A DNA stretch of 64,000 nucleotides from Lepidodermella squamata (lineage: Eukaryota; Animalia; Gastrotricha): positions 5,084,001 through 5,148,000 of the forward strand of contig JBLDXI010000024.1 in the NCBI GenBank assembly GCA_047495785.1. The letters run 5' to 3'. How positions within the stretch are numbered: position 1 is the stretch's first letter; each line of letters starts with the position of its first letter. Shown here in pieces: positions 1 through 64,000 of the stretch. The position numbers were made by a program, and so were the translations under genes. Below the pieces are notes generated by a model that worked only from the letters and a program-made list of their open reading frames with translations, searched no databases and was not told where the DNA came from.

Positions 1-28
1 GTCTCGGGTTCAATCCCCGATGCCTCCA
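1..28 (+). tRNA. tRNA-Ala(CGC), 3' part only (window edge)
   Basis: GTCTCGGGTTCAATCCCCGATGCCTCCA is identical to the 3' end of the copy at 853-924. Confidence 0.85.
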
Positions 29-115
29 GTTGGCAATTTTTTCGCGTAACCTCTCGAAGATTAGTTGCTATATCGGTGAAAGTGACCAGAAATTACGCTA
101 AAAATGTGAAAATAG

Positions 116-199
116 TGTCAGAAGTGGGGTTCGAACCCACGCCAGTAGAAACTGACTGCGACCTGAACGCAGCGCCTTGGACCGCTCGGCCATCCTGAC
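116..199 (-). tRNA. tRNA-Leu(CAG), chimeric form carrying the Leu-CAA 3' end and flank
   Basis: Reverse complement is GTCAGGATGGCCGAGCGGTCCAAGGCGCTGCG-TTCAGGT-CGCAG, long variable arm, GTGGGTTCGAACCCCACTTCTGACA. The same chimeric form is at 1012, 11925, 12821, 13717, 19457, 23698, 24594, 28835. Confidence 0.96.
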
Positions 200-368
200 G
201 AGATGGTGGAATAGATTGCTGATATCCTGCAGACGGCATTTTGCAAAGCTAAGATATCGCAGAGCAAGTACAGCAAACAGCAAAGTCGTATAACTGTTGC
301 CAATATAAAACTAGCCAGCTACGCCGATCGGGGTGTATCGTTTCTTAAACTGCTGAAGAAGCACTCAA

Positions 369-450
369 GTCGCTATGCCCGAGTGGTTAAGGGGTCTGAC
401 TAGAAATCAGATGCGGTCTCCGCGCGTAGGTTCAAATCCTACTGGCGACG
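369..450 (+). tRNA. tRNA-Ser(AGA)
   Basis: Acceptor stem GTCGCTA/TGGCGAC, G73, anticodon arm TCTGA-CTAGAAA-TCAGA, long variable arm, downstream T5. 22 copies, each 253 bp right of a Leu-CAG left end (e.g. 1265, 4601). Confidence 0.97.
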
Positions 451-525
451 ACAGTTATTTTTGCATTATAACGACTGAAACTCAGTTCTGCAGTTAGCCT
501 CCAGAACAGTCCTCGCTTTCATCAG

Positions 526-597
526 GCGTCAGTGGTGTAACGGTCAGCATGGTTGCCTTCCAAGCAGCCGATCCGGGTTCGACTCCCGGCTGACGCA
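526..597 (+). tRNA. tRNA-Gly(TCC)
   Basis: Acceptor GCGTCAG/CTGACGC, anticodon arm GTTGC-CTTCCAA-GCAGC, GGTTCGACTCC B box, T5 at 602-606. 25 copies including three junction variants. Confidence 0.97.
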
Positions 598-4431: not shown

Positions 4432-6532
4432 GAGATGGTGGAATAGATTGCTGATATCCTGCAGACGGCATTTTGCAAAGCTAAGATATCGCAGAGCAAG
4501 TACAGCAAACAGCAAAGTCGTATAACTGTTGCCAATATAAAACTAGCCAGCTACGCCGATCGGGGTGTATCGTTTCTTAAACTGCTGAAGAAGCACTCAA
4601 GTCGCTATGCCCGAGTGGTTAAGGGGTCTGACTAGAAATCAGATGCGGTCTCCGCGCGTAGGTTCAAATCCTACTGGCGACGACAGTTATTTTTGCATTA
4701 TAACGACTGAAACTCAGTTCTGCAGTTAGCCTCCAGAACAGTCCTCGCTTTCATCAGGCGTCAGTGGTGTAACGGTCAGCATGGTTGCCTTCCAAGCAGC
4801 CGATCCGGGTTCGACTCCCGGCTGACGCACACGTTTTTAGCTCACACGTTTGAAAGCAATTGCTAGTGACGAGATTAAAGCTGTCCTTCCCAAAACCAGC
4901 GTTCGAGAGGTCCCATGGTGTAGCGGTTAGCACTCTGGACTCTGAATCCAGCGACTCGAGTTCGATTCTCGATGGGACCTTGATACGTTTTTTCAAACAA
5001 ACTTTCAGCTCACTCACTCTCAGCTGATGGAAACTTGCGATCGCAATATTTGTTACCATTCAAACCTTTTCTTTCACTAGCCTAGGGGGCATAGCTCAGT
5101 GGTAGAGCGTCTCATTCGCATTGTGAAGGTCTCGGGTTCAATCCCCGATGCCTCCAGTTGGCAATTTTTTCGCGTAACCTCTCGAAGATTAGTTGCTATA
5201 TCGGTGAAAGTGACCAGAAATTACGCTAAAAATGTGAAAATAGTGTCAGAAGTGGGGTTCGAACCCACGCCCTCTTTCGAGGACCAGATCTTGAGTCTGG
5301 CGCCTTAGACCGCTCGGCCATCCTGACCAGATGTAGCTACTCTGGGAAATTGTTGTAATCCATCCGAAAATATGAGAACTTTGGCCGTTTAAAGGGCGAG
5401 CGCATTGCATTGCCGCATCTATCGATAGGCGAAATGGCTATCGCGTCGGACTTCGGATCCGAAGATTGTGGGTTCGAGTCCCATCAGCGTCGGCTCTATT
5501 TTTGCTGGCCTTTTCTTTCGGCTGAGCTGTTATCATAGCAACAGAATTATCACTTGTCAAGCTGTCAAGAATAATCACAAGGGCCTTCCTAGCTCAGTCG
5601 GTAGAGCATGTGACTTTTAATCACAGGGTCGGGGGTTCGAGTCCCCCGGAGGGCGCAATATTTTTACCCAGGGTAACATGTTTATGGCATCGACCGGCTG
5701 CTAAGAAGACGAAGATCTCGAAGGGGGATTAGCTCAAATGGTAGAGCGCTCGCTTAGCATGCGAGAGGTAACGGGATCGACGCCCGTATCCTCCATATAC
5801 TTTTTTCGGCAAGATAAAAAAGGCTGAAATGAGGAGACTGCGCTTGCGAAAATAAAGCAGTCAACCGCGGCTCAGTAGCTTAGTGGTAGAGCGTCTGCCT
5901 AGTAAGATGAAGATCGAGGGTTCGATCCCCCCCTGAGCCTGGTCTTGACACTTTTTGCAGCATTCGGAGGTCTTCCGTCCCTTTTATATAGCCATTTCAT
6001 TCAGGATCAAAATTGGAAAGGCTAAAAGTGTTCCCTGACCGGGAATCGAACCCGGGCCGCCGCGGTGAAAGCGCGGAATCCTAACCACTAGACCATCAGG
6101 GAGGTGCAAAATCCCTGTTGTATGCGTAAACTGTGAAGAACTCAAATTATCAACGTCATCGCACCTTCAGCAACTCTGTGCAAAAAATAGAATGGGCCCG
6201 TTCGGGAATTGAACCCGAGACCTCTCGCACCCGAAGCGAGAATCATACCCCTAGACCAACGGGCCAACCTGACTTTACCCAATTGGCAACTGGCAACCAA
6301 AGACTTTATTAGAACGTCTCCAGCGTTTATGCAAAACATGCGATACGCCGAGACCCGGGATCGAACCAGGGACCTTTAGATCTTCAGTCTAACGCTCTCC
6401 CAACTGAGCTATCTCGGCTGTTATTTACAGCAGTGCTAAAGTCGAAGCTTAACTTGTAGCTTAGCTAGGGAGCTCAATGCAGGCTGCTATGACTTTGGCA
6501 GCAAATAAAAAACTGCGCTCCTGGGTGGGCTC

Positions 6533-11028: not shown

Positions 11029-13716
11029 TGTCAGAAGTGGGATTCGAACCCACGCCAGTAGAAACTGACTGCGACCTGAACGCAGCGCCTTGGACCGCTC
11101 GGCCATCCTGACGAGATGGTGGAATAGATTGCTGATATCCTGCAGACGGCATTTTGCAAAGCTAAGATATCGCAGAGCAAGTACAGCAAACAGCAAAGTC
11201 GTATAACTGTTGCCAATATAAAACTAGCCAGCTACGCCGATCGGGGTGTATCGTTTCTTAAACTGCTGAAGAAGCACTCAAGTCGCTATGCCCGAGTGGT
11301 TAAGGGGTCTGACTAGAAATCAGATGCGGTCTCCGCGCGTAGGTTCAAATCCTACTGGCGACGACAGTTATTTTTGCATTATAACGACTGAAACTCAGTT
11401 CTGCAGTTAGCCTCCAGAACAGTCCTCGCTTTCATCAGGCGTCAGTGGTGTAACGGTCAGCATGGTTGCCTTCCAAGCAGCCGATCCGGGTTCGACTCCC
11501 GGCTGACGCACACGTTTTTAGCTCACACGTTTGAAAGCAATTGCTAGTGACGAGATTAAAGCTGTCCTTCCCAAAACCAGCGTTCGAGAGGTCCCATGGT
11601 GTAGCGGTTAGCACTCTGGACTCTGAATCCAGCGACTCGAGTTCGATTCTCGATGGGACCTTGATACGTTTTTTCAAACAAACTTTCAGCTCACTCACTC
11701 TCAGCTGATGGAAACTTGCGATCGCAATATTTGTTACCATTCAAACCTTTTCTTTCACTAGCCTAGGGGGCATAGCTCAGTGGTAGAGCGTCTCATTCGC
11801 ATTGTGAAGGTCTCGGGTTCAATCCCCGATGCCTCCAGTTGGCAATTTTTTCGCGTAACCTCTCGAAGATTAGTTGCTATATCGGTGAAAGTGACCAGAA
11901 ATTACGCTAAAAATGTGAAAATAGTGTCAGAAGTGGGGTTCGAACCCACGCCAGTAGAAACTGACTGCGACCTGAACGCAGCGCCTTGGACCGCTCGGCC
12001 ATCCTGACGAGATGGTGGAATAGATTGCTGATATCCTGCAGACGGCATTTTGCAAAGCTAAGATATCGCAGAGCAAGTACAGCAAACAGCAAAGTCGTAT
12101 AACTGTTGCCAATATAAAACTAGCCAGCTACGCCGATCGGGGTGTATCGTTTCTTAAACTGCTGAAGAAGCACTCAAGTCGCTATGCCCGAGTGGTTAAG
12201 GGGTCTGACTAGAAATCAGATGCGGTCTCCGCGCGTAGGTTCAAATCCTACTGGCGACGACAGTTATTTTTGCATTATAACGACTGAAACTCAGTTCTGC
12301 AGTTAGCCTCCAGAACAGTCCTCGCTTTCATCAGGCGTCAGTGGTGTAACGGTCAGCATGGTTGCCTTCCAAGCAGCCGATCCGGGTTCGACTCCCGGCT
12401 GACGCACACGTTTTTAGCTCACACGTTTGAAAGCAATTGCTAGTGACGAGATTAAAGCTGTCCTTCCCAAAACCAGCGTTCGAGAGGTCCCATGGTGTAG
12501 CGGTTAGCACTCTGGACTCTGAATCCAGCGACTCGAGTTCGATTCTCGATGGGACCTTGATACGTTTTTTCAAACAAACTTTCAGCTCACTCACTCTCAG
12601 CTGATGGAAACTTGCGATCGCAATATTTGTTACCATTCAAACCTTTTCTTTCACTAGCCTAGGGGGCATAGCTCAGTGGTAGAGCGTCTCATTCGCATTG
12701 TGAAGGTCTCGGGTTCAATCCCCGATGCCTCCAGTTGGCAATTTTTTCGCGTAACCTCTCGAAGATTAGTTGCTATATCGGTGAAAGTGACCAGAAATTA
12801 CGCTAAAAATGTGAAAATAGTGTCAGAAGTGGGGTTCGAACCCACGCCAGTAGAAACTGACTGCGACCTGAACGCAGCGCCTTGGACCGCTCGGCCATCC
12901 TGACGAGATGGTGGAATAGATTGCTGATATCCTGCAGACGGCATTTTGCAAAGCTAAGATATCGCAGAGCAAGTACAGCAAACAGCAAAGTCGTATAACT
13001 GTTGCCAATATAAAACTAGCCAGCTACGCCGATCGGGGTGTATCGTTTCTTAAACTGCTGAAGAAGCACTCAAGTCGCTATGCCCGAGTGGTTAAGGGGT
13101 CTGACTAGAAATCAGATGCGGTCTCCGCGCGTAGGTTCAAATCCTACTGGCGACGACAGTTATTTTTGCATTATAACGACTGAAACTCAGTTCTGCAGTT
13201 AGCCTCCAGAACAGTCCTCGCTTTCATCAGGCGTCAGTGGTGTAACGGTCAGCATGGTTGCCTTCCAAGCAGCCGATCCGGGTTCGACTCCCGGCTGACG
13301 CACACGTTTTTAGCTCACACGTTTGAAAGCAATTGCTAGTGACGAGATTAAAGCTGTCCTTCCCAAAACCAGCGTTCGAGAGGTCCCATGGTGTAGCGGT
13401 TAGCACTCTGGACTCTGAATCCAGCGACTCGAGTTCGATTCTCGATGGGACCTTGATACGTTTTTTCAAACAAACTTTCAGCTCACTCACTCTCAGCTGA
13501 TGGAAACTTGCGATCGCAATATTTGTTACCATTCAAACCTTTTCTTTCACTAGCCTAGGGGGCATAGCTCAGTGGTAGAGCGTCTCATTCGCATTGTGAA
13601 GGTCTCGGGTTCAATCCCCGATGCCTCCAGTTGGCAATTTTTTCGCGTAACCTCTCGAAGATTAGTTGCTATATCGGTGAAAGTGACCAGAAATTACGCT
13701 AAAAATGTGAAAATAG
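11029..13716. repeat. Three tandem 896-bp sub-units
   Basis: Leu-CAG left ends at 11029, 11925, 12821, 13717. Confidence 0.95.
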
Positions 13717-17061: not shown

Positions 17062-19246
17062 TGTCAGAAGTGGGGTTCGAACCCACGCCAGTAGAAACTG
17101 ACTGCGACCTGAACGCAGCGCCTTGGACCGCTCGGCCATCCTGACGAGATGGTGGAATAGATTGCTGATATCCTGCAGACGGCATTTTGCAAAGCTAAGA
17201 TATCGCAGAGCAAGTACAGCAAACAGCAAAGTCGTATAACTGTTGCCAATATAAAACTAGCCAGCTACGCCGATCGGGGTGTATCGTTTCTTAAACTGCT
17301 GAAGAAGCACTCAAGTCGCTATGCCCGAGTGGTTAAGGGGTCTGACTAGAAATCAGATGCGGTCTCCGCGCGTAGGTTCAAATCCTACTGGCGACGACAG
17401 TTATTTTTGCATTATAACGACTGAAACTCAGTTCTGCAGTTAGCCTCCAGAACAGTCCTCGCTTTCATCAGGCGTCAGTGGTGTAACGGTCAGCATGGTT
17501 GCCTTCCAAGCAGCCGATCCGGGTTCGACTCCCGGCTGACGCACACGTTTTTAGCTCACACGTTTGAAAGCAATTGCTAGTGACGAGATTAAAGCTGTCC
17601 TTCCCAAAACCAGCGTTCGAGAGGTCCCATGGTGTAGCGGTTAGCACTCTGGACTCTGAATCCAGCGACTCGAGTTCGATTCTCGATGGGACCTTGATAC
17701 GTTTTTTCAAACAAACTTTCAGCTCACTCACTCTCAGCTGATGGAAACTTGCGATCGCAATATTTGTTACCATTCAAACCTTTTCTTTCACTAGCCTAGG
17801 GGGCATAGCTCAGTGGTAGAGCGTCTCATTCGCATTGTGAAGGTCTCGGGTTCAATCCCCGATGCCTCCAGTTGGCAATTTATTCGCGTAACCTCTCGAA
17901 GATTAGTTGCTATATCGGTGAAAGTGACCAGAAATTACGCTAAAAATGTGAAAATAGTGTCAGAAGTGGGGTTCGAACCCACGCCCTCTTTCGAGGACCA
18001 GATCTTGAGTCTGGCGCCTTAGACCGCTCGGCCATCCTGACCAGATGTAGCTACTCTGGGAAATTGTTGTAATCCATCCGAAAATATGAGAAATTTGGCC
18101 GTTTAAAGGGCGAGCGCATTGCATTGCCGCATCTATCGATAGGCGAAATGGCTATCGCGTCGGACTTCGGATCCGAAGATTGTGGGTTCGAGTCCCATCA
18201 GCGTCGGCTCTATTTTTGCTGGCCTTTTCTTTCGGCTGAGCTGTTATCATAGCAACAGAATTATCACTTGTCAAGCTGTCAAGAATAATCACAAGGGCCT
18301 TCCTAGCTCAGTCGGTAGAGCATGTGACTTTTAATCACAGGGTCGGGGGTTCGAGTCCCCCGGAGGGCGCAATATTTTTACCCAGGGTAACATGTTTATG
18401 GCATCGACCGGCTGCTAAGAAGACGAAGATCTCGAAGGGGGATTAGCTCAAATGGTAGAGCGCTCGCTTAGCATGCGAGAGGTAACGGGATCGACGCCCG
18501 TATCCTCCATATACTTTTTTCGGCAAGATAAAAAAGGCTGAAATGAGGAGACTGCGCTTGCGAAAATAAAGCAGTCAACCGCGGCTCAGTAGCTTAGTGG
18601 TAGAGCGTCTGCCTAGTAAGATGAAGATCGAGGGTTCGATCCCCCCCTGAGCCTGGTCTTGACACTTTTTGCAGCATTCGGAGGTCTTCCGTCCCTTTTA
18701 TATAGCCATTTCATTCAGGATCAAAATTGGAAAGGCTAAAAGTGTTCCCTGACCGGGAATCGAACCCGGGCCGCCGCGGTGAAAGCGCGGAATCCTAACC
18801 ACTAGACCATCAGGGAGGTGCAAAATCCCTGTTGTATGCGTAAACTGTGAAGAACTCAAATTATCAACGTCATCGCACCTTCAGCAACTCTGTGCAAAAA
18901 ATAGAATGGGCCCGTTCGGGAATTGAACCCGAGACCTCTCGCACCCGAAGCGAGAATCATACCCCTAGACCAACGGGCCAACCTGACTTTACCCAATTGG
19001 CAACTGGCAACCAAAGACTTTATTAGAACGTCTCCAGCGTTTATGCAAAACATGCGATACGCCGAGACCCGGGATCGAACCAGGGACCTTTAGATCTTCA
19101 GTCTAACGCTCTCCCAACTGAGCTATCTCGGCTGTTATTTACAGCAGTGCTAAAGTCGAAGCTTAACTTGTAGCTTAGCTAGGGAGCTCAATGCAGGCTG
19201 CTATGACTTTGGCAGCAAATAAAAAACTGCGCTCCTGGGTGGGCTC

Positions 19247-45143: not shown

Positions 45144-45215
45144 GTGTCAGTGGTGTAACGGTCAGCATGGTTGCCTTCCAAGCAGCCGATCCGGGTTCGA
45201 CTCCCGGCTGACGCA
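45144..45215 (+). tRNA. tRNA-Gly(TCC) junction variant (C2 to U)
   Basis: Same junction as at 42202. Confidence 0.85.
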
Positions 45216-45805
45216 CACGTTTTTAGCTCACACGTTTGAAAGCAATTGCTAGTGACGAGATTAAAGCTGTCCTTCCCAAAACCAGCGTTCGAGAGGTCCC
45301 ATGGTGTAGCGGTTAGCACTCTGGACTCTGAATCCAGCGACTCGAGTTCGATTCTCGATGGGACCTTGATACGTTTTTTCAAACAAACTTTCAGCTCACT
45401 CACTCTCAGCTGATGGAAACTTGCGATCGCAATATTTGTTACCATTCAAACCTTTTCTTTCACTAGCCTAGGGGGCATAGCTCAGTGGTAGAGCGTCTCA
45501 TTCGCATTGTGAAGGTCTCGGGTTCAATCCCCGATGCCTCCAGTTGGCAATTTTTTCGCGTAACCTCTCGAAGATTAGTTGCTATATCGGTGAAAGTGAC
45601 CAGAAATTACGCTAAAAATGTGAAAATAGTGTCAGAAGTGGGGTTCGAACCCACGCCCTCTTTCGAGGACCAGATCTTGAGTCTGGCGCCTTAGACCGCT
45701 CGGCCATCCTGACCAGATGTAGCTACTCTGGGAAATTGTTGTAATCCATCCGAAAATATGAGAAATTTGGCCGTTTAAAGGGCGAGCGCATTGCATTGCC
45801 GCATA

Positions 45806-45878
45806 GGCGCTGTGGCGAAATGGCTATCGCGTCGGACTTCGGATCCGAAGATTGTGGGTTCGAGTCCCATCAGCGTCG
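45806..45878 (+). tRNA. tRNA-Arg(TCG), intact
   Basis: GGCGCTG/CAGCGTC acceptor, TG at positions 8-9, GCGA/TCGC D stem, TCG anticodon. Confidence 0.94.
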
Positions 45879-46918
45879 GCTCTATTTTTGCTGGCCTTTT
45901 CTTTCGGCTGAGCTGTTATCATAGCAACAGAATTATCACTTGTCAAGCTGTCAAGAATAATCACAAGGGCCTTCCTAGCTCAGTCGGTAGAGCATGTGAC
46001 TTTTAATCACAGGGTCGGGGGTTCGAGTCCCCCGGAGGGCGCAATATTTTTACCCAGGGTAACATGTTTATGGCATCGACCGGCTGCTAAGAAGACGAAG
46101 ATCTCGAAGGGGGATTAGCTCAAATGGTAGAGCGCTCGCTTAGCATGCGAGAGGTAACGGGATCGACGCCCGTATCCTCCATATACTTTTTTCGGCAAGA
46201 TAAAAAAGGCTGAAATGAGGAGACTGCGCTTGCGAAAATAAAGCAGTCAACCGCGGCTCAGTAGCTTAGTGGTAGAGCGTCTGCCTAGTAAGCAGAAGAT
46301 CGAGGGTTCGATCCCCCCCTGAGCCTGGTCTTGACACTTTTTGCAGCATTCGGAGGTCTTCCGTCCCTTTTATATAGCCATTTCATTCAGGATCAAAATT
46401 GGAAAGGCTAAAAGTGTTCCCTGACCGGGAATCGAACCCGGGCCGCCGCGGTGAAAGCGCGGAATCCTAACCACTAGACCATCAGGGAGGTGCAAAATCC
46501 CTGTTGTATGCGTAAACTGTGAAGAACTCAAATTATCAACGTCATCGCACCTTCAGCAACTCTGTGCAAAAAATAGAATGGGCCCGTTCGGGAATTGAAC
46601 CCGAGACCTCTCGCACCCGAAGCGAGAATCATACCCCTAGACCAACGGGCCAACCTGACTTTACCCAATTGGCAACTGGCAACCAAAGACTTTATTAGAA
46701 CGTCTCCAGCGTTTATGCAAAACATGCGATACGCCGAGACCCGGGATCGAACCAGGGACCTTTAGATCTTCAGTCTAACGCTCTCCCAACTGAGCTATCT
46801 CGGCTGTTATTTACAGCAGTGCTAAAGTCGAAGCTTAACTTGTAGCTTAGCTAGGGAGCTCAATGCAGGCTGCTATGACTTTGGCAGCAAATAAAAAACT
46901 GCGCTCCTGGGTGGGCTC

Positions 46919-46958
<40 letters not shown>

Positions 46959-48082
46959 AATTGCGCCACAGAAGCTGGCTAATCGCAGACTCGGCATCAC
47001 CACTCAGCAATATGTAGCTTTTAACGCGAGCGTTGCCATGATCACGTTGTTGCCGTTACAGTTTGGCTGTAGCCGAGGTTAGATCGGCCTTCGCATAGAA
47101 TATAAACAGAGCTGAACTGTCCTTCATCAATGATCCTCAGCCGCTTTAGCTCTGCCAACCCGCGATAGCTCAGCTGGTAGAGCGGAGGACTGTAGATGCA
47201 ACGCAGCTATCCTTAGGTCGGTGGTTCAAGTCCGCCTCGCGGGATTGCATGGTTTTTCACTTTCGTTGGGTAGCAGCTTTTCATTCGTTCGTCAGTAAAA
47301 ATGCGCTGATAGATGTGCAAAGGCCCGTTGGTCTAGGGGTATGATTCTCGCTTTGGGTGCGAGAGGTCTCGGGTTCAAATCCCGGACGGGCCCAAGCTTT
47401 TTGAGCTAATAGCTGAAGCGGCAGCATTACAAAAGGTGTTTGCCATAACCTTGAGCGCATGTAATGTTATCACAGCGGCATCGGTGGTTCAGTGGTAGAA
47501 TTCTCGCCTGCCACGCGGGAGGCCCGGGTTCGATTCCCGGCCGATGCAAGCGACCCTGTTTTTTCATATCAGCTTCGATGTGCATCAGGCAAATTATGAG
47601 CGCAGCAAAATCAAAAGCACTGACAATTCAAGACGCTTCAGTCATCCTTGGTAGTATAGTGGTTAGTATCCCCGCCTGTCACGCGGGAGACCAGGGTTCG
47701 ATTCCCTGCCAAGGAGTCAGCTTTTTTAGTTGCGGCGCATAGGTTTCGAGCCAATTTTTTGAGAAAATTGCTAAAAAGTTGATTGCCGCCCGATGTGGGG
47801 CTCGAACCCACGACCCTGGGATTAAGAGTCCCATGCTCTACCGACTGAGCTAACCGGGCTGAGGCGCTATCAATTGCCTAAGCCGACAATTATGAAGCAG
47901 TTGACTGCTGGCGAATGTTGACTGCCATCAAAAATACTCGAGGCTGCCAGGAGTCGAACCTGGAATCTTCTGATCCGTAGTCAGACGCGTTGTCCATTGC
48001 GCCACAACCCCATTCGGTGGAAAGAAGGCTTGCAAGCGCTAATTAGCAGGCAGGAATGGGACTGAAGTGAAAAATGTCAGTG

Positions 48083-48154
48083 GTGTCAGTGGTGTAACGG
48101 TCAGCATGGTTGCCTTCCAAGCAGCCGATCCGGGTTCGACTCCCGGCTGACGCA
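48083..48154 (+). tRNA. tRNA-Gly(TCC) junction variant (C2 to U)
   Basis: Same junction as at 42202. Confidence 0.85.
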
Positions 48155-49861
48155 CACGTTTTTAGCTCACACGTTTGAAAGCAATTGCTAGTGACGAGAT
48201 TAAAGCTGTCCTTCCCAAAACCAGCGTTCGAGAGGTCCCATGGTGTAGCGGTTAGCACTCTGGACTCTGAATCCAGCGACTCGAGTTCGATTCTCGATGG
48301 GACCTTGATACGTTTTTTCAAACAAACTTTCAGCTCACTCACTCTCAGCTGATGGAAACTTGCGATCGCAATATTTGTTACCATTCAAACCTTTTCTTTC
48401 ACTAGCCTAGGGGGCATAGCTCAGTGGTAGAGCGTCTCATTCGCATTGTGAAGGTCTCGGGTTCAATCCCCGATGCCTCCAGTTGGCAATTTTTTCGCGT
48501 AACCTCTCGAAGATTAGTTGCTATATCGGTGAAAGTGACCGGAAATTACGCTAAAAATGTGAAAATAGTGTCAGAAGTGGGGTTCGAACCCACGCCCTCT
48601 TTCGAGGACCAGATCTTGAGTCTGGCGCCTTAGACCGCTCGGCCATCCTGACCAGATGTAGCTACTCTGGGAAATTGTTGTAATCCATCCGAAAATATGA
48701 GAACTTTGGCCGTTTAAAGGGCGAGCGCATTGCATTGCCGCATCTATCGATAGGCGAAATGGCTATCGCGTCGGACTTCGGATCCGAAGATTGTGGGTTC
48801 GAGTCCCGTCAGCGTCGGCTCTATTTTTGCTGGCCTTTTCGGCTGAGCTGTTATCATAGCAACAGAATTATCACTTGTCAAGCTGTCAAGCTGTCAAGAA
48901 TAATCACAAGGGCCTTCCTAGCTCAGTCGGTAGAGCATGTGACTTTTAATCACAGGGTCGGGGGTTCGAGTCCCCCGGAGGGCGCAATATTTTTACCCAG
49001 GGTAACATGTTTATGGCATCGACCGGCTGCTAAGAAGACGAAGATCTCGAAGGGGGATTAGCTCAAATGGTAGAGCGCTCGCTTAGCATGCGAGAGGTAA
49101 CGGGATCGACGCCCGTATCCTCCATATACTTTTTTCGGCAAGATAAAAAAGGCTGAAATGAGGAGACTGCGCTTGCGAAAATAAAGCAGTCAACCGCGGC
49201 TCAGTAGCTTAGTGGTAGAGCGTCTGCCTAGTAAGATGAAGATCGAGGGTTCGATCCCCCCCTGAGCCTGGTCTTGACACTTTTTGCAGCATTCGGAGGT
49301 CTTCCGTCCCTTTTATATAGCCATTTCATTCAGGATCAAAATTGGAAAGGCTAAAAGTGTTCCCTGACCGGGAATCGAACCCGGGCCGCCGCGGTGAAAG
49401 CGCGGAATCCTAACCACTAGACCATCAGGGAGGTGCAAAATCCCTGTTGTATGCGTAAACTGTGAAGAACTCAAATTATCAACGTCATCGCACCTTCAGC
49501 AACTCTGTGCAAAAAATAGAATGGGCCCGTTCGGGAATTGAACCCGAGACCTCTCGCACCCGAAGCGAGAATCATACCCCTAGACCAACGGGCCAACCTG
49601 ACTTTACCCAATTGGCAACTGGCAACCAAAGACTTTATTAGAACGTCTCCAGCGTTTATGCAAAACATGCGATACGCCGAGACCCGGGATCGAACCAGGG
49701 ACCTTTAGATCTTCAGTCTAACGCTCTCCCAACTGAGCTATCTCGGCTGTTATTTACAGCAGTGCTAAAGTCGAAGCTTAACTTGTAGCTTAGCTAGGGA
49801 GCTCAATGCAGGCTGCTATGACTTTGGCAGCAAATAAAAAACTGCGCTCCTGGGTGGGCTC

Positions 49862-49901
<40 letters not shown>

Positions 49902-52900
49902 AATTGCGCCACAGAAGCTGGCTAATCGCAGACTCGGCATCACCACTCAGCAATATGTAGCTTTTAACGCGAGCGTTGCCATGATCACGTTGTTGCCGTT
50001 ACAGTTTGGCTGTAGCCGAGGTTAGATCGGCCTTCGCATAGAATATAAACAGAGCTGAACTGTCCTTCATCAATGATCCTCAGCCGCTTTAGCTCTGCCA
50101 ACCCGCGATAGCTCAGCTGGTAGAGCGGAGGACTGTAGATGCAACGCAGCTATCCTTAGGTCGGTGGTTCAAGTCCGCCTCGCGGGATTGCATGGTTTTT
50201 CACTTTCGTTGGGTAGCAGCTTTTCATTCGTTCGTCAGTAAAAATGCGCTGATAGATGTGCAAAGGCCCGTTGGTCTAGGGGTATGATTCTCGCTTTGGG
50301 TGCGAGAGGTCTCGGGTTCAAATCCCGGACGGGCCCAAGCTTTTTGAGCTAATAGCTGAAGCGGCAGCATTACAAAAGGTGTTTGCCATAACCTTGAGCG
50401 CATGTAATGTTATCACAGCGGCATCGGTGGTTCAGTGGTAGAATTCTCGCCTGCCACGCGGGAGGCCCGGGTTCGATTCCCGGCCGATGCAAGCGACCCT
50501 GTTTTTTCATATCAGCTTCGATGTGCATCAGGCAAATTATGAGCGCAGCAAAATCAAAAGCACTGACAATTCAAGACGCTTCAGTCATCCTTGGTAGTAT
50601 AGTGGTTAGTATCCCCGCCTGTCACGCGGGAGACCAGGGTTCGATTCCCTGCCAAGGAGTCAGCTTTTTTAGTTGCGGCGCATAGGTTTCGAGCCAATTT
50701 TTTGAGAAAATTGCTAAAAAGTTGATTGCCGCCCGATGTGGGGCTCGAACCCACGACCCTGGGATTAAGAGTCCCATGCTCTACCGACTGAGCTAACCGG
50801 GCTGAGGCGCTATCAATTGCCTAAGCCGACAATTATGAAGCAGTTGACTGCTGGCGAATGTTGACTGCCATCAAAAATACTCGAGGCTGCCAGGAGTCGA
50901 ACCTGGAATCTTCTGATCCGTAGTCAGACGCGTTGTCCATTGCGCCACAACCCCATTCGGTCGAAAGAAGGCTTGCAAGCGCTAATTAGCAGGCAGGAAT
51001 GGGACTGAAGTGAAAAATGCATGTCAGAAGTGGGATTCGAACCCACGCCAGTAGAAACTGACTGCGACCTGAACGCAGCGCCTTGGACCGCTCGGCCATC
51101 CTGACGAGATGGTGGAATAGATTGCTGATATCCTGCAGACGGCATTTTGCAAAGCTAAGATATCGCAGAGCAAGTACAGCAAACAGCAAAGTCGTATAAC
51201 TGTTGCCAATATAAAACTAGCCAGCTACGCCGATCGGGGTGTATCGTTTCTTAAACTGCTGAAGAAGCACTCAAGTCGCTATGCCCGAGTGGTTAAGGGG
51301 TCTGACTAGAAATCAGATGCGGTCTCCGCGCGTAGGTTCAAATCCTACTGGCGACGACAGTTATTTTTGCATTATAACGACTGAAACTCAGTTCTGCAGT
51401 TAGCCTCCAGAACAGTCCTCGCTTTCATCAGGCGTCAGTGGTGTAACGGTCAGCATGGTTGCCTTCCAAGCAGCCGATCCGGGTTCGACTCCCGGCTGAC
51501 GCACACGTTTTTAGCTCACACGTTTGAAAGCAATTGCTAGTGACGAGATTAAAGCTGTCCTTCCCAAAACCAGCGTTCGAGAGGTCCCATGGTGTAGCGG
51601 TTAGCACTCTGGACTCTGAATCCAGCGACTCGAGTTCGATTCTCGATGGGACCTTGATACGTTTTTTCAAACAAACTTTCAGCTCACTCACTCTCAGCTG
51701 ATGGAAACTTGCGATCGCAATATTTGTTACCATTCAAACCTTTTCTTTCACTAGCCTAGGGGGCATAGCTCAGTGGTAGAGCGTCTCATTCGCATTGTGA
51801 AGGTCTCGGGTTCAATCCCCGATGCCTCCAGTTGGCAATTTTTTCGCGTAACCTCTCGAAGATTAGTTGCTATATCGGTGAAAGTGACCAGAAATTACGC
51901 TAAAAATGTGAAAATAGTGTCAGAAGTGGGGTTCGAACCCACGCCCTCTTTCGAGGACCAGATCTTGAGTCTGGCGCCTTAGACCGCTCGGCCATCCTGA
52001 CCAGATGTAGCTACTCTGGGAAATTGTTGTAATCCATCCGAAAATATGAGAAATTTGGCCGTTTAAAGGGCGAGCGCATTGCATTGCCGCATCTATCGAT
52101 AGGCGAAATGGCTATCGCGTCGGACTTCGGATCCGAAGATTGTGGGTTCGAGTCCCATCAGCGTCGGCTCTATTTTTGCTGGCCTTTTCTTTCGGCTGAG
52201 CTGTTATCATAGCAACAGAATTATCACTTGTCAAGCTGTCAAGCTGTCAAGAATAATCACAAGGGCCTTCCTAGCTCAGTCGGTAGAGCATGTGACTTTT
52301 AATCACAGGGTCGGGGGTTCGAGTCCCCCGGAGGGCGCAATATTTTTACCCAGGGTAACATGTTTATGGCATCGACCGGCTGCTAAGAAGACGAAGATCT
52401 CGAAGGGGGATTAGCTCAAATGGTAGAGCGCTCGCTTAGCATGCGAGAGGTAACGGGATCGACGCCCGTATCCTCCATATACTTTTTTCGGCAAGATAAA
52501 AAAGGCTGAAATGAGGAGACTGCGCTTGCGAAAATAAAGCAGTCAACCGCGGCTCAGTAGCTTAGTGGTAGAGCGTCTGCCTAGTAAGCAGAAGATCGAG
52601 GGTTCGATCCCCCCCTGAGCCTGGTCTTGACACTTTTTGCAGCATTCGGAGGTCTTCCGTCCCTTTTATATAGCCATTTCATTCAGGATCAAAATTGGAA
52701 AGGCTAAAAGTGTTCCCTGACCGGGAATCGAACCCGGGCCGCCGCGGTGAAAGCGCGGAATCCTAACCACTAGACCATCAGGGAGGTGCAAAATCCCTGT
52801 TGTATGCGTAAACTGTGAAGAACTCAAATTATCAACGTCATCGCACCTTCAGCAACTCTGTGCAAAAAATAGAATGGGCCCGTTCGGGAATTGAACCCGA

Positions 52901-56603: not shown

Positions 56604-58795
56604 AATTGCGCCACAGAAGCTGGCTAATCGCAGACTCGGCATCACCACTCAGCAATATGTAGCTTTTAACGCGAGCGTTGCCATGATCACGTTGTTGCCG
56701 TTACAGTTTGGCTGTAGCCGAGGTTAGATCGGCCTTCGCATAGAATATAAACAGAGCTGAACTGTCCTTCATCAATGATCCTCAGCCGCTTTAGCTCTGC
56801 CAACCCGCGATAGCTCAGCTGGTAGAGCGGAGGACTGTAGATGCAACGCAGCTATCCTTAGGTCGGTGGTTCAAGTCCGCCTCGCGGGATTGCATGGTTT
56901 TTCACTTTCGTTGGGTAGCAGCTTTTCATTCGTTCGTCAGTAAAAATGCGCTGATAGATGTGCAAAGGCCCGTTGGTCTAGGGGTATGATTCTCGCTTTG
57001 GGTGCGAGAGGTCTCGGGTTCAAATCCCGGACGGGCCCAAGCTTTTTGAGCTAATAGCTGAAGCGGCAGCATTACAAAAGGTGTTTGCCATAACCTTGAG
57101 CGCATGTAATGTTATCACAGCGGCATCGGTGGTTCAGTGGTAGAATTCTCGCCTGCCACGCGGGAGGCCCGGGTTCGATTCCCGGCCGATGCAAGCGACC
57201 CTGTTTTTTCATATCAGCTTCGATGTGCATCAGGCAAATTATGAGCGCAGCAAAATCAAAAGCACTGACAATTCAAGACGCTTCAGTCATCCTTGGTAGT
57301 ATAGTGGTTAGTATCCCCGCCTGTCACGCGGGAGACCAGGGTTCGATTCCCTGCCAAGGAGTCAGCTTTTTTAGTTGCGGCGCATAGGTTTCGAGCCAAT
57401 TTTTTGAGAAAATTGCTAAAAAGTTGATTGCCGCCCGATGTGGGGCTCGAACCCACGACCCTGGGATTAAGAGTCCCATGCTCTACCGACTGAGCTAACC
57501 GGGCTGAGGCGCTATCAATTGCCTAAGCCGACAATTATGAAGCAGTTGACTGCTGGCGAATGTTGACTGCCATCAAAAATACTCGAGGCTGCCAGGAGTC
57601 GAACCTGGAATCTTCTGATCCGTAGTCAGACGCGTTGTCCATTGCGCCACAACCCCATTCGGTCGAAAGAAGGCTTGCAAGCGCTAATTAGCAGGCAGGA
57701 ATGGGACTGAAGTGAAAAATGCATGTCAGAAGTGGGATTCGAACCCACGCCAGTAGAAACTGACTGCGACCTGAACGCAGCGCCTTGGACCGCTCGGCCA
57801 TCCTGACGAGATGGTGGAATAGATTGCTGATATCCTGCAGACGGCATTTTGCAAAGCTAAGATATCGCAGAGCAAGTACAGCAAACAGCAAAGTCGTATA
57901 ACTGTTGCCAATATAAAACTAGCCAGCTACGCCGATCGGGGTGTATCGTTTCTTAAACTGCTGAAGAAGCACTCAAGTCGCTATGCCCGAGTGGTTAAGG
58001 GGTCTGACTAGAAATCAGATGCGGTCTCCGCGCGTAGGTTCAAATCCTACTGGCGACGACAGTTATTTTTGCATTATAACGACTGAAACTCAGTTCTGCA
58101 GTTAGCCTCCAGAACAGTCCTCGCTTTCATCAGGCGTCAGTGGTGTAACGGTCAGCATGGTTGCCTTCCAAGCAGCCGATCCGGGTTCGACTCCCGGCTG
58201 ACGCACACGTTTTTAGCTCACACGTTTGAAAGCAATTGCTAGTGACGAGATTAAAGCTGTCCTTCCCAAAACCAGCGTTCGAGAGGTCCCATGGTGTAGC
58301 GGTTAGCACTCTGGACTCTGAATCCAGCGACTCGAGTTCGATTCTCGATGGGACCTTGATACGTTTTTTCAAACAAACTTTCAGCTCACTCACTCTCAGC
58401 TGATGGAAACTTGCGATCGCAATATTTGTTACCATTCAAACCTTTTCTTTCACTAGCCTAGGGGGCATAGCTCAGTGGTAGAGCGTCTCATTCGCATTGT
58501 GAAGGTCTCGGGTTCAATCCCCGATGCCTCCAGTTGGCAATTTTTTCGCGTAACCTCTCGAAGATTAGTTGCTATATCGGTGAAAGTGACCAGAAATTAC
58601 GCTAAAAATGTGAAAATAGTGTCAGAAGTGGGGTTCGAACCCACGCCCTCTTTCGAGGACCAGATCTTGAGTCTGGCGCCTTAGACCGCTCGGCCATCCT
58701 GACCAGATGTAGCTACTCTGGGAAATTGTTGTAATCCATCCGAAAATATGAGAAATTTGGCCGTTTAAAGGGCGAGCGCATTGCATTGCCGCATA

Positions 58796-58868
58796 GGCGC
58801 TGTGGCGAAATGGCTATCGCGTCGGACTTCGGATCCGAAGATTGTGGGTTCGAGTCCCATCAGCGTCG
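58796..58868 (+). tRNA. tRNA-Arg(TCG), intact
   Basis: Same as 45806-45878. Confidence 0.94.
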
Positions 58869-59908
58869 GCTCTATTTTTGCTGGCCTTTTCTTTCGGCTG
58901 AGCTGTTATCATAGCAACAGAATTATCACTTGTCAAGCTGTCAAGAATAATCACAAGGGCCTTCCTAGCTCAGTCGGTAGAGCATGTGACTTTTAATCAC
59001 AGGGTCGGGGGTTCGAGTCCCCCGGAGGGCGCAATATTTTTACCCAGGGTAACATGTTTATGGCATCGACCGGCTGCTAAGAAGACGAAGATCTCGAAGG
59101 GGGATTAGCTCAAATGGTAGAGCGCTCGCTTAGCATGCGAGAGGTAACGGGATCGACGCCCGTATCCTCCATATACTTTTTTCGGCAAGATAAAAAAGGC
59201 TGAAATGAGGAGACTGCGCTTGCGAAAATAAAGCAGTCAACCGCGGCTCAGTAGCTTAGTGGTAGAGCGTCTGCCTAGTAAGCAGAAGATCGAGGGTTCG
59301 ATCCCCCCCTGAGCCTGGTCTTGACACTTTTTGCAGCATTCGGAGGTCTTCCGTCCCTTTTATATAGCCATTTCATTCAGGATCAAAATTGGAAAGGCTA
59401 AAAGTGTTCCCTGACCGGGAATCGAACCCGGGCCGCCGCGGTGAAAGCGCGGAATCCTAACCACTAGACCATCAGGGAGGTGCAAAATCCCTGTTGTATG
59501 CGTAAACTGTGAAGAACTCAAATTATCAACGTCATCGCACCTTCAGCAACTCTGTGCAAAAAATAGAATGGGCCCGTTCGGGAATTGAACCCGAGACCTC
59601 TCGCACCCGAAGCGAGAATCATACCCCTAGACCAACGGGCCAACCTGACTTTACCCAATTGGCAACTGGCAACCAAAGACTTTATTAGAACGTCTCCAGC
59701 GTTTATGCAAAACATGCGATACGCCGAGACCCGGGATCGAACCAGGGACCTTTAGATCTTCAGTCTAACGCTCTCCCAACTGAGCTATCTCGGCTGTTAT
59801 TTACAGCAGTGCTAAAGTCGAAGCTTAACTTGTAGCTTAGCTAGGGAGCTCAATGCAGGCTGCTATGACTTTGGCAGCAAATAAAAAACTGCGCTCCTGG
59901 GTGGGCTC

Positions 59909-59948
<40 letters not shown>

Positions 59949-62148
59949 AATTGCGCCACAGAAGCTGGCTAATCGCAGACTCGGCATCACCACTCAGCAA
60001 TATGTAGCTTTTAACGCGAGCGTTGCCATGATCACGTTGTTGCCGTTACAGTTTGGCTGTAGCCGAGGTTAGATCGGCCTTCGCATAGAATATAAACAGA
60101 GCTGAACTGTCCTTCATCAATGATCCTCAGCCGCTTTAGCTCTGCCAACCCGCGATAGCTCAGCTGGTAGAGCGGAGGACTGTAGATGCAACGCAGCTAT
60201 CCTTAGGTCGGTGGTTCAAGTCCGCCTCGCGGGATTGCATGGTTTTTCACTTTCGTTGGGTAGCAGCTTTTCATTCGTTCGTCAGTAAAAATGCGCTGAT
60301 AGATGTGCAAAGGCCCGTTGGTCTAGGGGTATGATTCTCGCTTTGGGTGCGAGAGGTCTCGGGTTCAAATCCCGGACGGGCCCAAGCTTTTTGAGCTAAT
60401 AGCTGAAGCGGCAGCATTACAAAAGGTGTTTGCCATAACCTTGAGCGCATGTAATGTTATCACAGCGGCATCGGTGGTTCAGTGGTAGAATTCTCGCCTG
60501 CCACGCGGGAGGCCCGGGTTCGATTCCCGGCCGATGCAAGCGACCCTGTTTTTTCATATCAGCTTCGATGTGCATCAGGCAAATTATGAGCGCAGCAAAA
60601 TCAAAAGCACTGACAATTCAAGACGCTTCAGTCATCCTTGGTAGTATAGTGGTTAGTATCCCCGCCTGTCACGCGGGAGACCAGGGTTCGATTCCCTGCC
60701 AAGGAGTCAGCTTTTTTAGTTGCGGCGCATAGGTTTCGAGCCAATTTTTTGAGAAAATTGCTAAAAAGTTGATTGCCGCCCGATGTGGGGCTCGAACCCA
60801 CGACCCTGGGATTAAGAGTCCCATGCTCTACCGACTGAGCTAACCGGGCTGAGGCGCTATCAATTGCCTAAGCCGACAATTATGAAGCAGTTGACTGCTG
60901 GCGAATGTTGACTGCCATCAAAAATACTCGAGGCTGCCAGGAGTCGAACCTGGAATCTTCTGATCCGTAGTCAGACGCGTTGTCCATTGCGCCACAACCC
61001 CATTCGGTCGAAAGAAGGCTTGCAAGCGCTAATTAGCAGGCAGGAATGGGACTGAAGTGAAAAATGCATGTCAGAAGTGGGATTCGAACCCACGCCAGTA
61101 GAAACTGACTGCGACCTGAACGCAGCGCCTTGGACCGCTCGGCCATCCTGACGAGATGGTGGAATAGATTGCTGATATCCTGCAGACGGCATTTTGCAAA
61201 GCTAAGATATCGCAGAGCAAGTACAGCAAACAGCAAAGTCGTATAACTGTTGCCAATATAAAACTAGCCAGCTACGCCGATCGGGGTGTATCGTTTCTTA
61301 AACTGCTGAAGAAGCACTCAAGTCGCTATGCCCGAGTGGTTAAGGGGTCTGACTAGAAATCAGATGCGGTCTCCGCGCGTAGGTTCAAATCCTACTGGCG
61401 ACGACAGTTATTTTTGCATTATAACGACTGAAACTCAGTTCTGCAGTTAGCCTCCAGAACAGTCCTCGCTTTCATCAGGCGTCAGTGGTGTAACGGTCAG
61501 CATGGTTGCCTTCCAAGCAGCCGATCCGGGTTCGACTCCCGGCTGACGCACACGTTTTTAGCTCACACGTTTGAAAGCAATTGCTAGTGACGAGATTAAA
61601 GCTGTCCTTCCCAAAACCAGCGTTCGAGAGGTCCCATGGTGTAGCGGTTAGCACTCTGGACTCTGAATCCAGCGACTCGAGTTCGATTCTCGATGGGACC
61701 TTGATACGTTTTTTCAAACAAACTTTCAGCTCACTCACTCTCAGCTGATGGAAACTTGCGATCGCAATATTTGTTACCATTCAAACCTTTTCTTTCACTA
61801 GCCTAGGGGGCATAGCTCAGTGGTAGAGCGTCTCATTCGCATTGTGAAGGTCTCGGGTTCAATCCCCGATGCCTCCAGTTGGCAATTTTTTCGCGTAACC
61901 TCTCGAAGATTAGTTGCTATATCGGTGAAAGTGACCAGAAATTACGCTAAAAATGTGAAAATAGTGTCAGAAGTGGGGTTCGAACCCACGCCCTCTTTCG
62001 AGGACCAGATCTTGAGTCTGGCGCCTTAGACCGCTCGGCCATCCTGACCAGATGTAGCTACTCTGGGAAATTGTTGTAATCCATCCGAAAATATGAGAAA
62101 TTTGGCCGTTTAAAGGGCGAGCGCATTGCATTGCCGCATCTATCGATA

Positions 62149-62221
62149 GGCGCTGTGGCGAAATGGCTATCGCGTCGGACTTCGGATCCGAAGATTGTGG
62201 GTTCGAGTCCCATCAGCGTCG
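62149..62221 (+). tRNA. tRNA-Arg(TCG), intact, with an 8-nt longer 5' flank
   Basis: GCATCTATCGATA followed by GGCGCTGTGGCGAAATGG, so both 8-nt segments are present. Confidence 0.94.
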
Positions 62222-63261
62222 GCTCTATTTTTGCTGGCCTTTTCTTTCGGCTGAGCTGTTATCATAGCAACAGAATTATCACTTGTCAAGCTGTCAAGAA
62301 TAATCACAAGGGCCTTCCTAGCTCAGTCGGTAGAGCATGTGACTTTTAATCACAGGGTCGGGGGTTCGAGTCCCCCGGAGGGCGCAATATTTTTACCCAG
62401 GGTAACATGTTTATGGCATCGACCGGCTGCTAAGAAGACGAAGATCTCGAAGGGGGATTAGCTCAAATGGTAGAGCGCTCGCTTAGCATGCGAGAGGTAA
62501 CGGGATCGACGCCCGTATCCTCCATATACTTTTTTCGGCAAGATAAAAAAGGCTGAAATGAGGAGACTGCGCTTGCGAAAATAAAGCAGTCAACCGCGGC
62601 TCAGTAGCTTAGTGGTAGAGCGTCTGCCTAGTAAGCAGAAGATCGAGGGTTCGATCCCCCCCTGAGCCTGGTCTTGACACTTTTTGCAGCATTCGGAGGT
62701 CTTCCGTCCCTTTTATATAGCCATTTCATTCAGGATCAAAATTGGAAAGGCTAAAAGTGTTCCCTGACCGGGAATCGAACCCGGGCCGCCGCGGTGAAAG
62801 CGCGGAATCCTAACCACTAGACCATCAGGGAGGTGCAAAATCCCTGTTGTATGCGTAAACTGTGAAGAACTCAAATTATCAACGTCATCGCACCTTCAGC
62901 AACTCTGTGCAAAAAATAGAATGGGCCCGTTCGGGAATTGAACCCGAGACCTCTCGCACCCGAAGCGAGAATCATACCCCTAGACCAACGGGCCAACCTG
63001 ACTTTACCCAATTGGCAACTGGCAACCAAAGACTTTATTAGAACGTCTCCAGCGTTTATGCAAAACATGCGATACGCCGAGACCCGGGATCGAACCAGGG
63101 ACCTTTAGATCTTCAGTCTAACGCTCTCCCAACTGAGCTATCTCGGCTGTTATTTACAGCAGTGCTAAAGTCGAAGCTTAACTTGTAGCTTAGCTAGGGA
63201 GCTCAATGCAGGCTGCTATGACTTTGGCAGCAAATAAAAAACTGCGCTCCTGGGTGGGCTC

Positions 63262-63301
<40 letters not shown>

Positions 63302-64000
63302 AATTGCGCCACAGAAGCTGGCTAATCGCAGACTCGGCATCACCACTCAGCAATATGTAGCTTTTAACGCGAGCGTTGCCATGATCACGTTGTTGCCGTT
63401 ACAGTTTGGCTGTAGCCGAGGTTAGATCGGCCTTCGCATAGAATATAAACAGAGCTGAACTGTCCTTCATCAATGATCCTCAGCCGCTTTAGCTCTGCCA
63501 ACCCGCGATAGCTCAGCTGGTAGAGCGGAGGACTGTAGATGCAACGCAGCTATCCTTAGGTCGGTGGTTCAAGTCCGCCTCGCGGGATTGCATGGTTTTT
63601 CACTTTCGTTGGGTAGCAGCTTTTCATTCGTTCGTCAGTAAAAATGCGCTGATAGATGTGCAAAGGCCCGTTGGTCTAGGGGTATGATTCTCGCTTTGGG
63701 TGCGAGAGGTCTCGGGTTCAAATCCCGGACGGGCCCAAGCTTTTTGAGCTAATAGCTGAAGCGGCAGCATTACAAAAGGTGTTTGCCATAACCTTGAGCG
63801 CATGTAATGTTATCACAGCGGCATCGGTGGTTCAGTGGTAGAATTCTCGCCTGCCACGCGGGAGGCCCGGGTTCGATTCCCGGCCGATGCAAGCGACCCT
63901 GTTTTTTCATATCAGCTTCGATGTGCATCAGGCAAATTATGAGCGCAGCAAAATCAAAAGCACTGACAATTCAAGACGCTTCAGTCATCCTTGGTAGTAT

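What the first reader, a model, noticed from the sequence alone, without database searches (positions are those of the whole stretch)
1..64000. rDNA-like tandem array of a compact, non-redundant 20-anticodon tRNA cassette
Seen: one 3.35-kb unit holds 20 tRNA genes with no anticodon repeated, covering 14 amino acids, and is amplified to about 380 genes in 64 kb with near-identical spacers. No CCA is encoded; A34 anticodons (AGA, AGC, AGT, ACG), a Tyr intron and oligo-T terminators are present, so these are nuclear Pol III genes. Known: the tandem tRNA repeats I know of carry far fewer genes per unit (human 1q23 five-gene unit, Xenopus 3.18-kb eight-gene unit, Entamoeba 1-5 genes with STR spacers, Arabidopsis Ser-Tyr-Tyr). 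Inference: a large share of the tRNA set is packaged as one co-amplified module, which would let total tRNA dosage scale by unit copy number at near-fixed ratios, as rDNA does. This is the best candidate for an undescribed system in this window.
Basis: partly seen in the sequence, partly recalled or inferred. Interest (0 to 1): 0.9.

Follow-up and report, generated by a model that had tools for sequence, protein, structure and literature searches.

The report
Tandem array of 20-tRNA cassette
A small invertebrate (probably the gastrotrich Lepidodermella squamata) repeats a 3.3-kb block of 20 different transfer-RNA genes head to tail like ribosomal DNA; the array is real and unusually gene-rich for an animal, but a fission yeast has a similar one, and the block neither keeps fixed gene ratios nor reads the whole genetic code.

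Summary
Observation confirmed: all 64 kb is a head-to-tail array of a 3,336-3,353-bp unit with 20 nuclear tRNA genes (20 anticodons, 14 amino acids; 380 copies; units 99.2-99.9% identical). All 20 genes have their own oligo-T terminator and lie on both strands, so they are separate Pol III units. The 'fixed-ratio dosage module' reading is only partly supported. Recombination between Leu-CAG and Leu-CAA added seven extra 896-bp five-gene blocks, four units carry deletions, Arg-TCG is dead in 15/18 copies, Thr-AGT has a broken anticodon stem in 9/18, and only 1 of 13 complete units is fully intact. The unit reads 35/61 codons (no Met, Ile, Val, Cys, Trp, His). Mosaic unit haplotypes and the absence of inversions argue against an amplification artefact. 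A metagenome contig from another organism holds a 1,037-bp unit of five different tRNAs plus U5 snRNA, probably also tandem. Prior art exists: Schizosaccharomyces japonicus has 18-tRNA units in 34-46 copies (PMC7619369). The scan has already noted 20-, 27- and 35-gene sibling cassettes elsewhere in this genome. Verdict: new, gene-rich animal variant of known tandem tRNA arrays.

The parts
1..64000 (.). Head-to-tail tRNA-gene array filling the window (380 gene copies; runs off both ends)
57724..61068 (.). The only complete unit with all 20 genes intact (3,345 bp; genes 1,493 bp = 45%)
57724..57807 (-). tRNA-Leu(CAG)
57977..58058 (+). tRNA-Ser(AGA), lineage-typical sequence shared with metagenome contig L001
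58134..58205 (+). tRNA-Gly(TCC)
58285..58356 (+). tRNA-Gln(CTG)
58461..58532 (+). tRNA-Ala(CGC), one T.T mismatch in the anticodon stem, same in nearly all copies
58619..58703 (-). tRNA-Leu(CAA), intronless
58796..58868 (+). tRNA-Arg(TCG), intact allele (also at 45806 and 62149)
58959..59031 (+). tRNA-Lys(TTT)
59099..59171 (+). tRNA-Ala(AGC)
59245..59316 (+). tRNA-Thr(AGT), allele with paired anticodon stem (9 of 18 copies)
59407..59478 (-). tRNA-Glu(TTC)
59570..59641 (-). tRNA-Pro(CGG), 96% identical to Pro(TGG), opposite orientation
59722..59794 (-). tRNA-Phe(GAA)
59892..59965 (-). tRNA-Asn(GTT)
60149..60234 (+). tRNA-Tyr(GTA) with 13-nt intron after position 37
60312..60383 (+). tRNA-Pro(TGG)
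60468..60538 (+). tRNA-Gly(GCC)
60635..60706 (+). tRNA-Asp(GTC)
60777..60849 (-). tRNA-Lys(CTT)
60929..61001 (-). tRNA-Arg(ACG)
11029..13716 (.). Three tandem 896-bp five-gene blocks (Leu-CAG, Ser, Gly-TCC, Gln, Ala-CGC); others at 116-1011, 22802-24593 (two) and 27939-28834
11924..12008 (-). Example of a hybrid Leu gene (CAG body, CAA-type position 71 and trailer); 9 such genes, all with the same crossover
17062..19456 (.). Truncated unit lacking Tyr, Pro-TGG, Gly-GCC, Asp, Lys-CTT and Arg-ACG; junction near 19400
42201..51021 (.). Three adjacent units that lack Leu-CAG and Ser-AGA; the junction leaves Gly-TCC with one acceptor-stem change
5420..5492 (+). Example of the dead Arg-TCG allele: 8-nt deletion of the 5' acceptor strand between two GGCG repeats; 15 of 18 copies
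5869..5940 (+). Example of the Thr-AGT allele with two mismatches in the anticodon stem; 9 of 18 copies

Best explanation
A chromosomal multigene tandem array of 20 independently transcribed Pol III tRNA genes that evolves like rDNA or histone-gene repeats. SHOWN: each gene has its own terminator; genes lie on both strands; spacers are 67-104 bp (169-183 bp at two of three divergent pairs); units are homogenised but mosaic; sub-blocks expand and delete by recombination between similar tRNA genes or microhomologies. INFERRED: an ancestral compact cluster of different tRNA genes was captured as one unit and amplified by unequal crossing-over and gene conversion. The array supplies part of the cell's tRNA, alongside sibling cassettes elsewhere in the genome. 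Selection acts on the total pool rather than on each copy, so dead alleles (Arg-TCG, Thr-AGT) drift to high frequency inside the array and gene ratios are only loosely coupled. The lack of repeated anticodons is probably partly mechanical: a second similar gene in the same orientation makes a recombination target that resolves the unit, as the Leu-CAG/Leu-CAA pair shows.
For: 20/20 terminators against 1/20 on the other strand; Rfam 52-70 bits; 16 of 20 genes invariant or with a single variant copy. 15 distinct haplotypes among 16 units, 21 of 105 informative site pairs fail the four-gamete test, and neighbours are slightly more alike (Mantel rho 0.24, p 0.013). Nine hybrid Leu genes share one crossover. 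No inverted match is longer than 81 bp. Organism B runs hold 25-29% of the unit's 31-mers while 26.8% of 31-mers lie inside genes, as expected if gene bodies are conserved and spacers are not. A 1,037-bp unit of 5 different tRNAs + U5 with a 111-bp terminal repeat occurs in an independent metagenome.
Against: No expression or Pol III occupancy data. Variants inside the array are not significantly depleted from genes (7 gene vs 15 spacer events, p 0.16; shared variants 2 vs 9, p 0.07), and both shared gene variants are damaging. The orientation pattern of similar pairs is not significant (p 0.32). Read depth could not be checked.
Confidence: 0.7

Rival explanations
1. Selected stoichiometric dosage module: the cassette is kept intact so that tRNA supply scales with copy number at fixed ratios.
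For: 20 non-redundant anticodons are unlikely by random assembly (p 0.008 or less); dense packing; sibling 20-, 27- and 35-gene cassettes are reported elsewhere in this genome (not checked by me).
Against: Copy numbers run 16-25 and intact Arg-TCG has 3; only 1 of 13 complete units is intact; 4 units carry deletions; only 35/61 codons; the related unit in L001 shares only Ser-AGA and has a different gene set and order.
Confidence: 0.15
2. Mostly silent array with a structural role (heterochromatin, centromere-like or boundary DNA), or one switched on only in a stage or tissue, as for the S. japonicus centromeric arrays and the Arabidopsis SYY cluster.
For: Dead alleles reach 50-83% of copies; the SYY cluster is silent in most tissues (PMC12308677); S. 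japonicus 18-tRNA units sit in centromeric and centromere-like regions.
Against: Terminators and gene bodies are conserved for all 20 genes; earlier notes place single-copy genes about 24 kb before and 28 kb after the window and say most tRNA genes of this genome lie in such blocks (unverified), which would leave few other sources of tRNA.
Confidence: 0.1
3. Technical expansion: phi29 whole-genome amplification (rolling-circle on a circular copy, or chimeras) or mis-assembly produced a long array from a few units.
For: If the genome is the L. squamata assembly, it came from MDA of one animal with HiFi reads (PMC11660948); I could not check read depth.
Against: Rolling-circle copies would be identical, but 15 of 16 units differ and are recombinant mosaics. 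No inversions, the chimera type usually ascribed to MDA (my knowledge). The paper found no chimeric contigs and 2.25x higher coverage in repeat-rich blocks, which points to collapse rather than expansion. The other organism of the same study holds none of the words (X24). A similar unit exists in an independent metagenome.
Confidence: 0.05

Closest known systems
Schizosaccharomyces japonicus tRNA/5S arrays (PMC7619369)
   Same: Head-to-tail unit with many different tRNA genes: 18 tRNAs (16 amino acids) in 5.6-6.4 kb, 34 and 46 copies; a 15-tRNA unit over 575 kb with a shorter deletion variant.
   Different: Fungus; includes three 5S genes and LTRs; centromeric or subtelomeric; less dense. Here 20 genes in 3.35 kb, no 5S, animal, apparently between single-copy genes.
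Human 1q23.3 tDNA VNTR (PMC4041453)
   Same: Tandem unit of tRNA genes on both strands, copy-number variable (9-43), genes conserved and spacers not.
   Different: Five genes (Gly twice) in 7.3 kb, under 6% of the unit; here 20 genes make up 45%.
Hydractinia and Nematostella ncRNA tandem arrays (PMC11067881, PMC2888827)
   Same: Animal genomes with tRNA genes for all amino acids in evenly spaced, near-identical tandem arrays.
   Different: The passages I read describe spacers of hundreds to thousands of bases and no unit with many different anticodons; I did not read the supplementary tables.
Phytophthora infestans tRNA arrays (PMC9584435)
   Same: Thousands of tRNA genes in tandem arrays grown by unequal crossing-over, confirmed by read depth.
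   Different: Units of one to three genes.
Xenopus laevis 3.18-kb oocyte-type tRNA repeat and Entamoeba tRNA-STR arrays
   Same: Multi-tRNA tandem units (8 genes in Xenopus, 1-5 in Entamoeba; from memory, the Xenopus paper was not held).
   Different: Fewer genes; Entamoeba spacers carry short tandem repeats, not seen in the unit here.
Arabidopsis SYY cluster (PMC12308677)
   Same: Tandem tRNA cluster.
   Different: Two amino acids only; silenced except in root cap cells.
Prokaryotic tRNA array units (PMC4758250, abstract only)
   Same: At least 20 tRNA genes in a dense block.
   Different: Defined as one dense block of genes, in bacteria; here the block is a nuclear Pol III unit repeated head to tail.

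Membership tests
Tandem multi-tRNA gene arrays (tDNA macrosatellites) | Head-to-tail repeat unit containing tRNA genes | tested here: met
Tandem multi-tRNA gene arrays (tDNA macrosatellites) | Units homogenised in genes and spacers (concerted evolution), with recombinant variants | tested here: met
   99.2-99.9% identity; four-gamete failures
Tandem multi-tRNA gene arrays (tDNA macrosatellites) | Several different isoacceptors per unit | tested here: met
   20 anticodons
Tandem multi-tRNA gene arrays (tDNA macrosatellites) | Array length confirmed by read depth or spanning reads; copy-number variation between individuals | not tested
Nuclear Pol III type-2 tRNA genes | Cloverleaf with internal A/B boxes, no encoded CCA, oligo-T terminator | tested here: met
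Nuclear Pol III type-2 tRNA genes | Transcribed and processed in vivo | not testable with these tools
   the holding runs are contigs only and RNA runs hold 0.15 or less of the words
rDNA-type fixed-stoichiometry unit | All components made from one precursor, or at fixed 1:1 copy ratio | tested here: not met
   12 genes on + and 8 on -, one terminator each; copies 16-25, intact Arg-TCG 3
Self-sufficient decoding set | Reads all 61 sense codons | tested here: not met
   35/61 with generous wobble
tRNA-derived SINE or satellite of pseudogenes | One or few tRNA types, decayed bodies, A-rich tails or target-site duplications | tested here: not met
   20 different high-scoring genes, unrelated spacers
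S. japonicus-type centromeric tRNA/5S array | 5S rRNA genes in the unit | tested here: not met
   no 5S in Rfam scan
S. japonicus-type centromeric tRNA/5S array | Centromeric chromatin | not testable with these tools
   needs CENP-A or H3K9me ChIP

The most novel reading that the evidence does not exclude
In this animal lineage (probably chaetonotid gastrotrichs) most tRNA supply comes from a few large multi-anticodon cassettes (20, 27 and 35 genes), each tandemly amplified, so that the cell's tRNA pool is set by the copy numbers of a handful of co-amplified modules and changes in steps by recombination between paralogous tRNA genes. That would be a natural system for testing whether tRNA gene dosage, codon use and translation capacity co-vary.
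Probability: 0.3. Interest if true: 0.7.

Novelty: new variant of a known kind. Interest (0 to 1): 0.5.

Why it matters
It is the gene-richest class of tandem tRNA unit I could find for an animal, in a phylum whose genome paper never mentions tRNA. Because array-specific alleles exist (intact vs dead Arg-TCG, paired vs unpaired Thr-AGT, hybrid Leu-CAG), it allows direct tests of how selection acts on redundant tRNA copies and whether tRNA level follows gene dosage. It also records tRNA-mediated recombination in action: nine identical hybrid Leu genes mark the birth of a sub-array. It does not show a new mechanism: a fungus has the same architecture, and the scan has already flagged sibling cassettes in this genome many times.

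Tried and rejected
I do not take the contig for human: spacers and several genes (Ser-AGA, Thr-AGT) are unlike the human ones as I recall them, and a conserved tRNA probably tripped the filter. Scans of viral contigs and genome contigs with the Ser-AGA pattern found nothing. No paper names the metagenome accession. Polycistronic transcription is rejected (both strands, 20 terminators). Protein coding is rejected: the longest ORF (129 aa, 7078-7467) overlaps three tRNA genes and 13% of shuffles give one as long. No shared upstream motif or TATA box in the 40 bp before the genes. No 5S, snRNA or relic tRNA in the spacers and no spacer-to-spacer similarity. The idea that similar genes are kept in opposite orientation to avoid recombination fits the top pairs (Pro 96%, Lys 82%, Arg 77% all opposite; the same-strand Leu pair did recombine) but is not significant (p 0.32). 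Depletion of variants in genes within the array is not significant. Literature searches for gastrotrich tRNA clusters and for richer animal units found none; the library lacks most subscription papers.
Full report
Observation. The whole window is one tRNA-gene array. ARAGORN finds 364 genes of 20 anticodons, and a census with the 20 genes as queries finds 380 copies, the difference being 15 5'-deleted Arg-TCG genes and one deleted Phe gene. The full unit is 3,336-3,353 bp and matches unit 4348-7692 at 99.2-99.9%, always in the same orientation. Gene order is Leu-CAG(-), Ser-AGA, Gly-TCC, Gln-CTG, Ala-CGC, Leu-CAA(-), Arg-TCG, Lys-TTT, Ala-AGC, Thr-AGT, Glu-TTC(-), Pro-CGG(-), Phe-GAA(-), Asn-GTT(-), Tyr-GTA (13-nt intron), Pro-TGG, Gly-GCC, Asp-GTC, Lys-CTT(-), Arg-ACG(-). 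Rfam gives 52-70 bits for 19 genes and no other RNA family at threshold. Twenty draws from 46 anticodons avoid a repeat with probability 0.008 or less.

Anatomy. Genes fill 45% of the unit. Each of the 20 has a run of four to six T within 25 nt downstream on its own strand, against 1 of 20 on the opposite strand; none encodes CCA. Twelve genes are on + and eight on -. So these are separate nuclear Pol III genes, not one precursor. Spacers are 67-104 bp between tandem and convergent genes and 92-183 bp between divergent genes; this is about the room a terminator plus one or two TFIIIB footprints need (inference from general Pol III knowledge). There is no shared upstream motif, and the one long ORF is chance.

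The array is not uniform. It holds 13 complete units, one cut by the window end, three adjacent units without Leu-CAG and Ser-AGA (42201-51021), one unit missing six genes (17062-19456), and seven extra 896-bp blocks of five genes. The 896-bp block arose by a crossover between the two same-strand Leu genes: nine hybrid genes have a CAG body with the CAA-type position 71 and trailer, all with the same junction. Arg-TCG has lost the 5' acceptor strand (8 nt between two GGCG repeats) in 15 of 18 copies and cannot form the acceptor stem. Thr-AGT has two anticodon-stem mismatches in 9 of 18 copies. Only unit 57724-61068 has all 20 genes intact. Copies per gene run from 16 to 25, and intact Arg-TCG has 3. 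With generous wobble the unit reads 35 of 61 codons and has no Met, Ile, Val, Cys, Trp or His.

How it evolves. Sixteen aligned units give 15 haplotypes; 21 of 105 informative site pairs fail the four-gamete test; neighbours are slightly more alike (rho 0.24, p 0.013). This is the pattern of unequal crossing-over plus gene conversion. Within the array, variants are not significantly depleted from genes (p 0.16; shared variants p 0.07), so selection per copy is weak. Over longer time the genes are conserved: runs of another species (organism B) hold 25-29% of the unit's sampled 31-mers, and 26.8% of 31-mers lie wholly inside genes. That match suggests conserved gene bodies with diverged spacers; it is an inference, because I could not lay the reads.

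Organism and artefact risk. Earlier scan notes suggest the gastrotrich Lepidodermella squamata. The numbers fit: 1,993 windows on 147 pieces against a 122-Mb, 157-contig assembly, a freshwater, biofilm and wastewater spread of partial holders, and a second organism of about 100 Mb in the same study as the best holder, as C. elegans is in that paper. I did not confirm the identity by sequence. That assembly came from multiple displacement amplification of one animal, so an artefact had to be considered. Against it: units are mosaic rather than identical, there is no inverted match over 81 bp, the paper found no chimeric contig and higher, not lower, coverage in repeat-rich blocks, and the study's other organism holds none of the words. 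Earlier notes place ordinary genes about 24 kb before and 28 kb after the window and the array's start about 17.6 kb before it, which would make the array about 82-110 kb; I could not check this.

A relative. A Ser-AGA pattern found one metagenome contig, L001 (JAAUYE010007721.1, 1,148 bp). It has a perfect 111-bp terminal repeat, the usual sign of a collapsed tandem or circular unit of 1,037 bp, carrying Arg-TCT, Thr-TGT, Leu-TAG, Ser-AGA, Pro-AGG and a U5 snRNA gene. Ser-AGA is 91% identical to the window's over 96 nt; spacers are unrelated. The organism is unknown. It suggests that non-redundant multi-gene units are a habit of the wider lineage and that their content turns over, since only one anticodon is shared.

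Mechanism. Most likely (0.7): a compact cluster of different tRNA genes became one repeat unit and was amplified and homogenised like rDNA; it contributes to the tRNA pool together with sibling cassettes; selection works on the pool, so dead alleles drift and ratios are loose. Non-redundancy may be partly mechanical, since a similar gene in the same orientation breaks the unit up, as the Leu pair did; the orientation test for this is not significant. Rivals: a selected fixed-ratio module (0.15), a mostly silent or stage-specific structural array (0.1), an artefact (0.05).

Comparison. S. japonicus has a 5.6-6.4-kb unit with 18 tRNA genes (16 amino acids) and three 5S genes in 34 and 46 copies, and a 15-tRNA unit over 575 kb with a deletion variant (PMC7619369). 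This is the same architecture and removes the claim that known units are much smaller. Human 1q23.3 has five genes per unit, Phytophthora one to three, and Hydractinia and Nematostella have tandem tRNA arrays. I found no animal unit with 20 different anticodons and no mention of tRNA in the L. squamata genome paper. The scan itself has noted 20-gene/19-amino-acid, 27-gene, 35-gene and 8-gene cassettes on other contigs of this genome; the unit here has a different content (14 amino acids) from those as described, and their relation is untested.

Verdict. Real, unusually gene-rich for an animal, mechanistically conventional as far as shown, with expression and copy number untested. New variant of a known kind; interest 0.5.

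Noticed in passing
L001:1-1148 (JAAUYE010007721.1): 1,037-bp unit with five different tRNA genes and a U5 snRNA gene (981-1102, minus strand, 76 bits), 111-bp terminal repeat; organism unknown; Leu-TAG lacks a T4 run within 25 nt and lies 69 bp before Ser-AGA, so these two might be co-transcribed.
   Followed up: partly
window 42190-42273 (also near 45143 and 48082): The deletion that removes Leu-CAG and Ser-AGA comes with a 9-bp duplication that restores G at position 1 of Gly-TCC, leaving one C-to-T change that can pair as G-U.
   Followed up: partly
window 59245-59316: Thr-AGT is 85% identical to the Thr-TGT of L001 and, from memory, unlike the usual animal Thr-AGT type; possible anticodon shift in this lineage.
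   Followed up: no
window 58461-58532: Ala-CGC has a T.T mismatch in the anticodon stem, the same in all copies apart from one 5'-end variant.
   Followed up: no
window 17062-17145: One Leu-CAG gene carries the CAA-type position 71 but a CAG-type trailer: a short gene-conversion tract or a double crossover.
   Followed up: partly
window about 40860-40930: Single Phe-GAA copy with a 7-nt deletion in the D-arm region (unit 38860).
   Followed up: partly
window 45143-48081: The middle one of the three deletion units carries the intact Arg-TCG allele while its two neighbours carry the dead one, so alleles move between units after duplication.
   Followed up: partly
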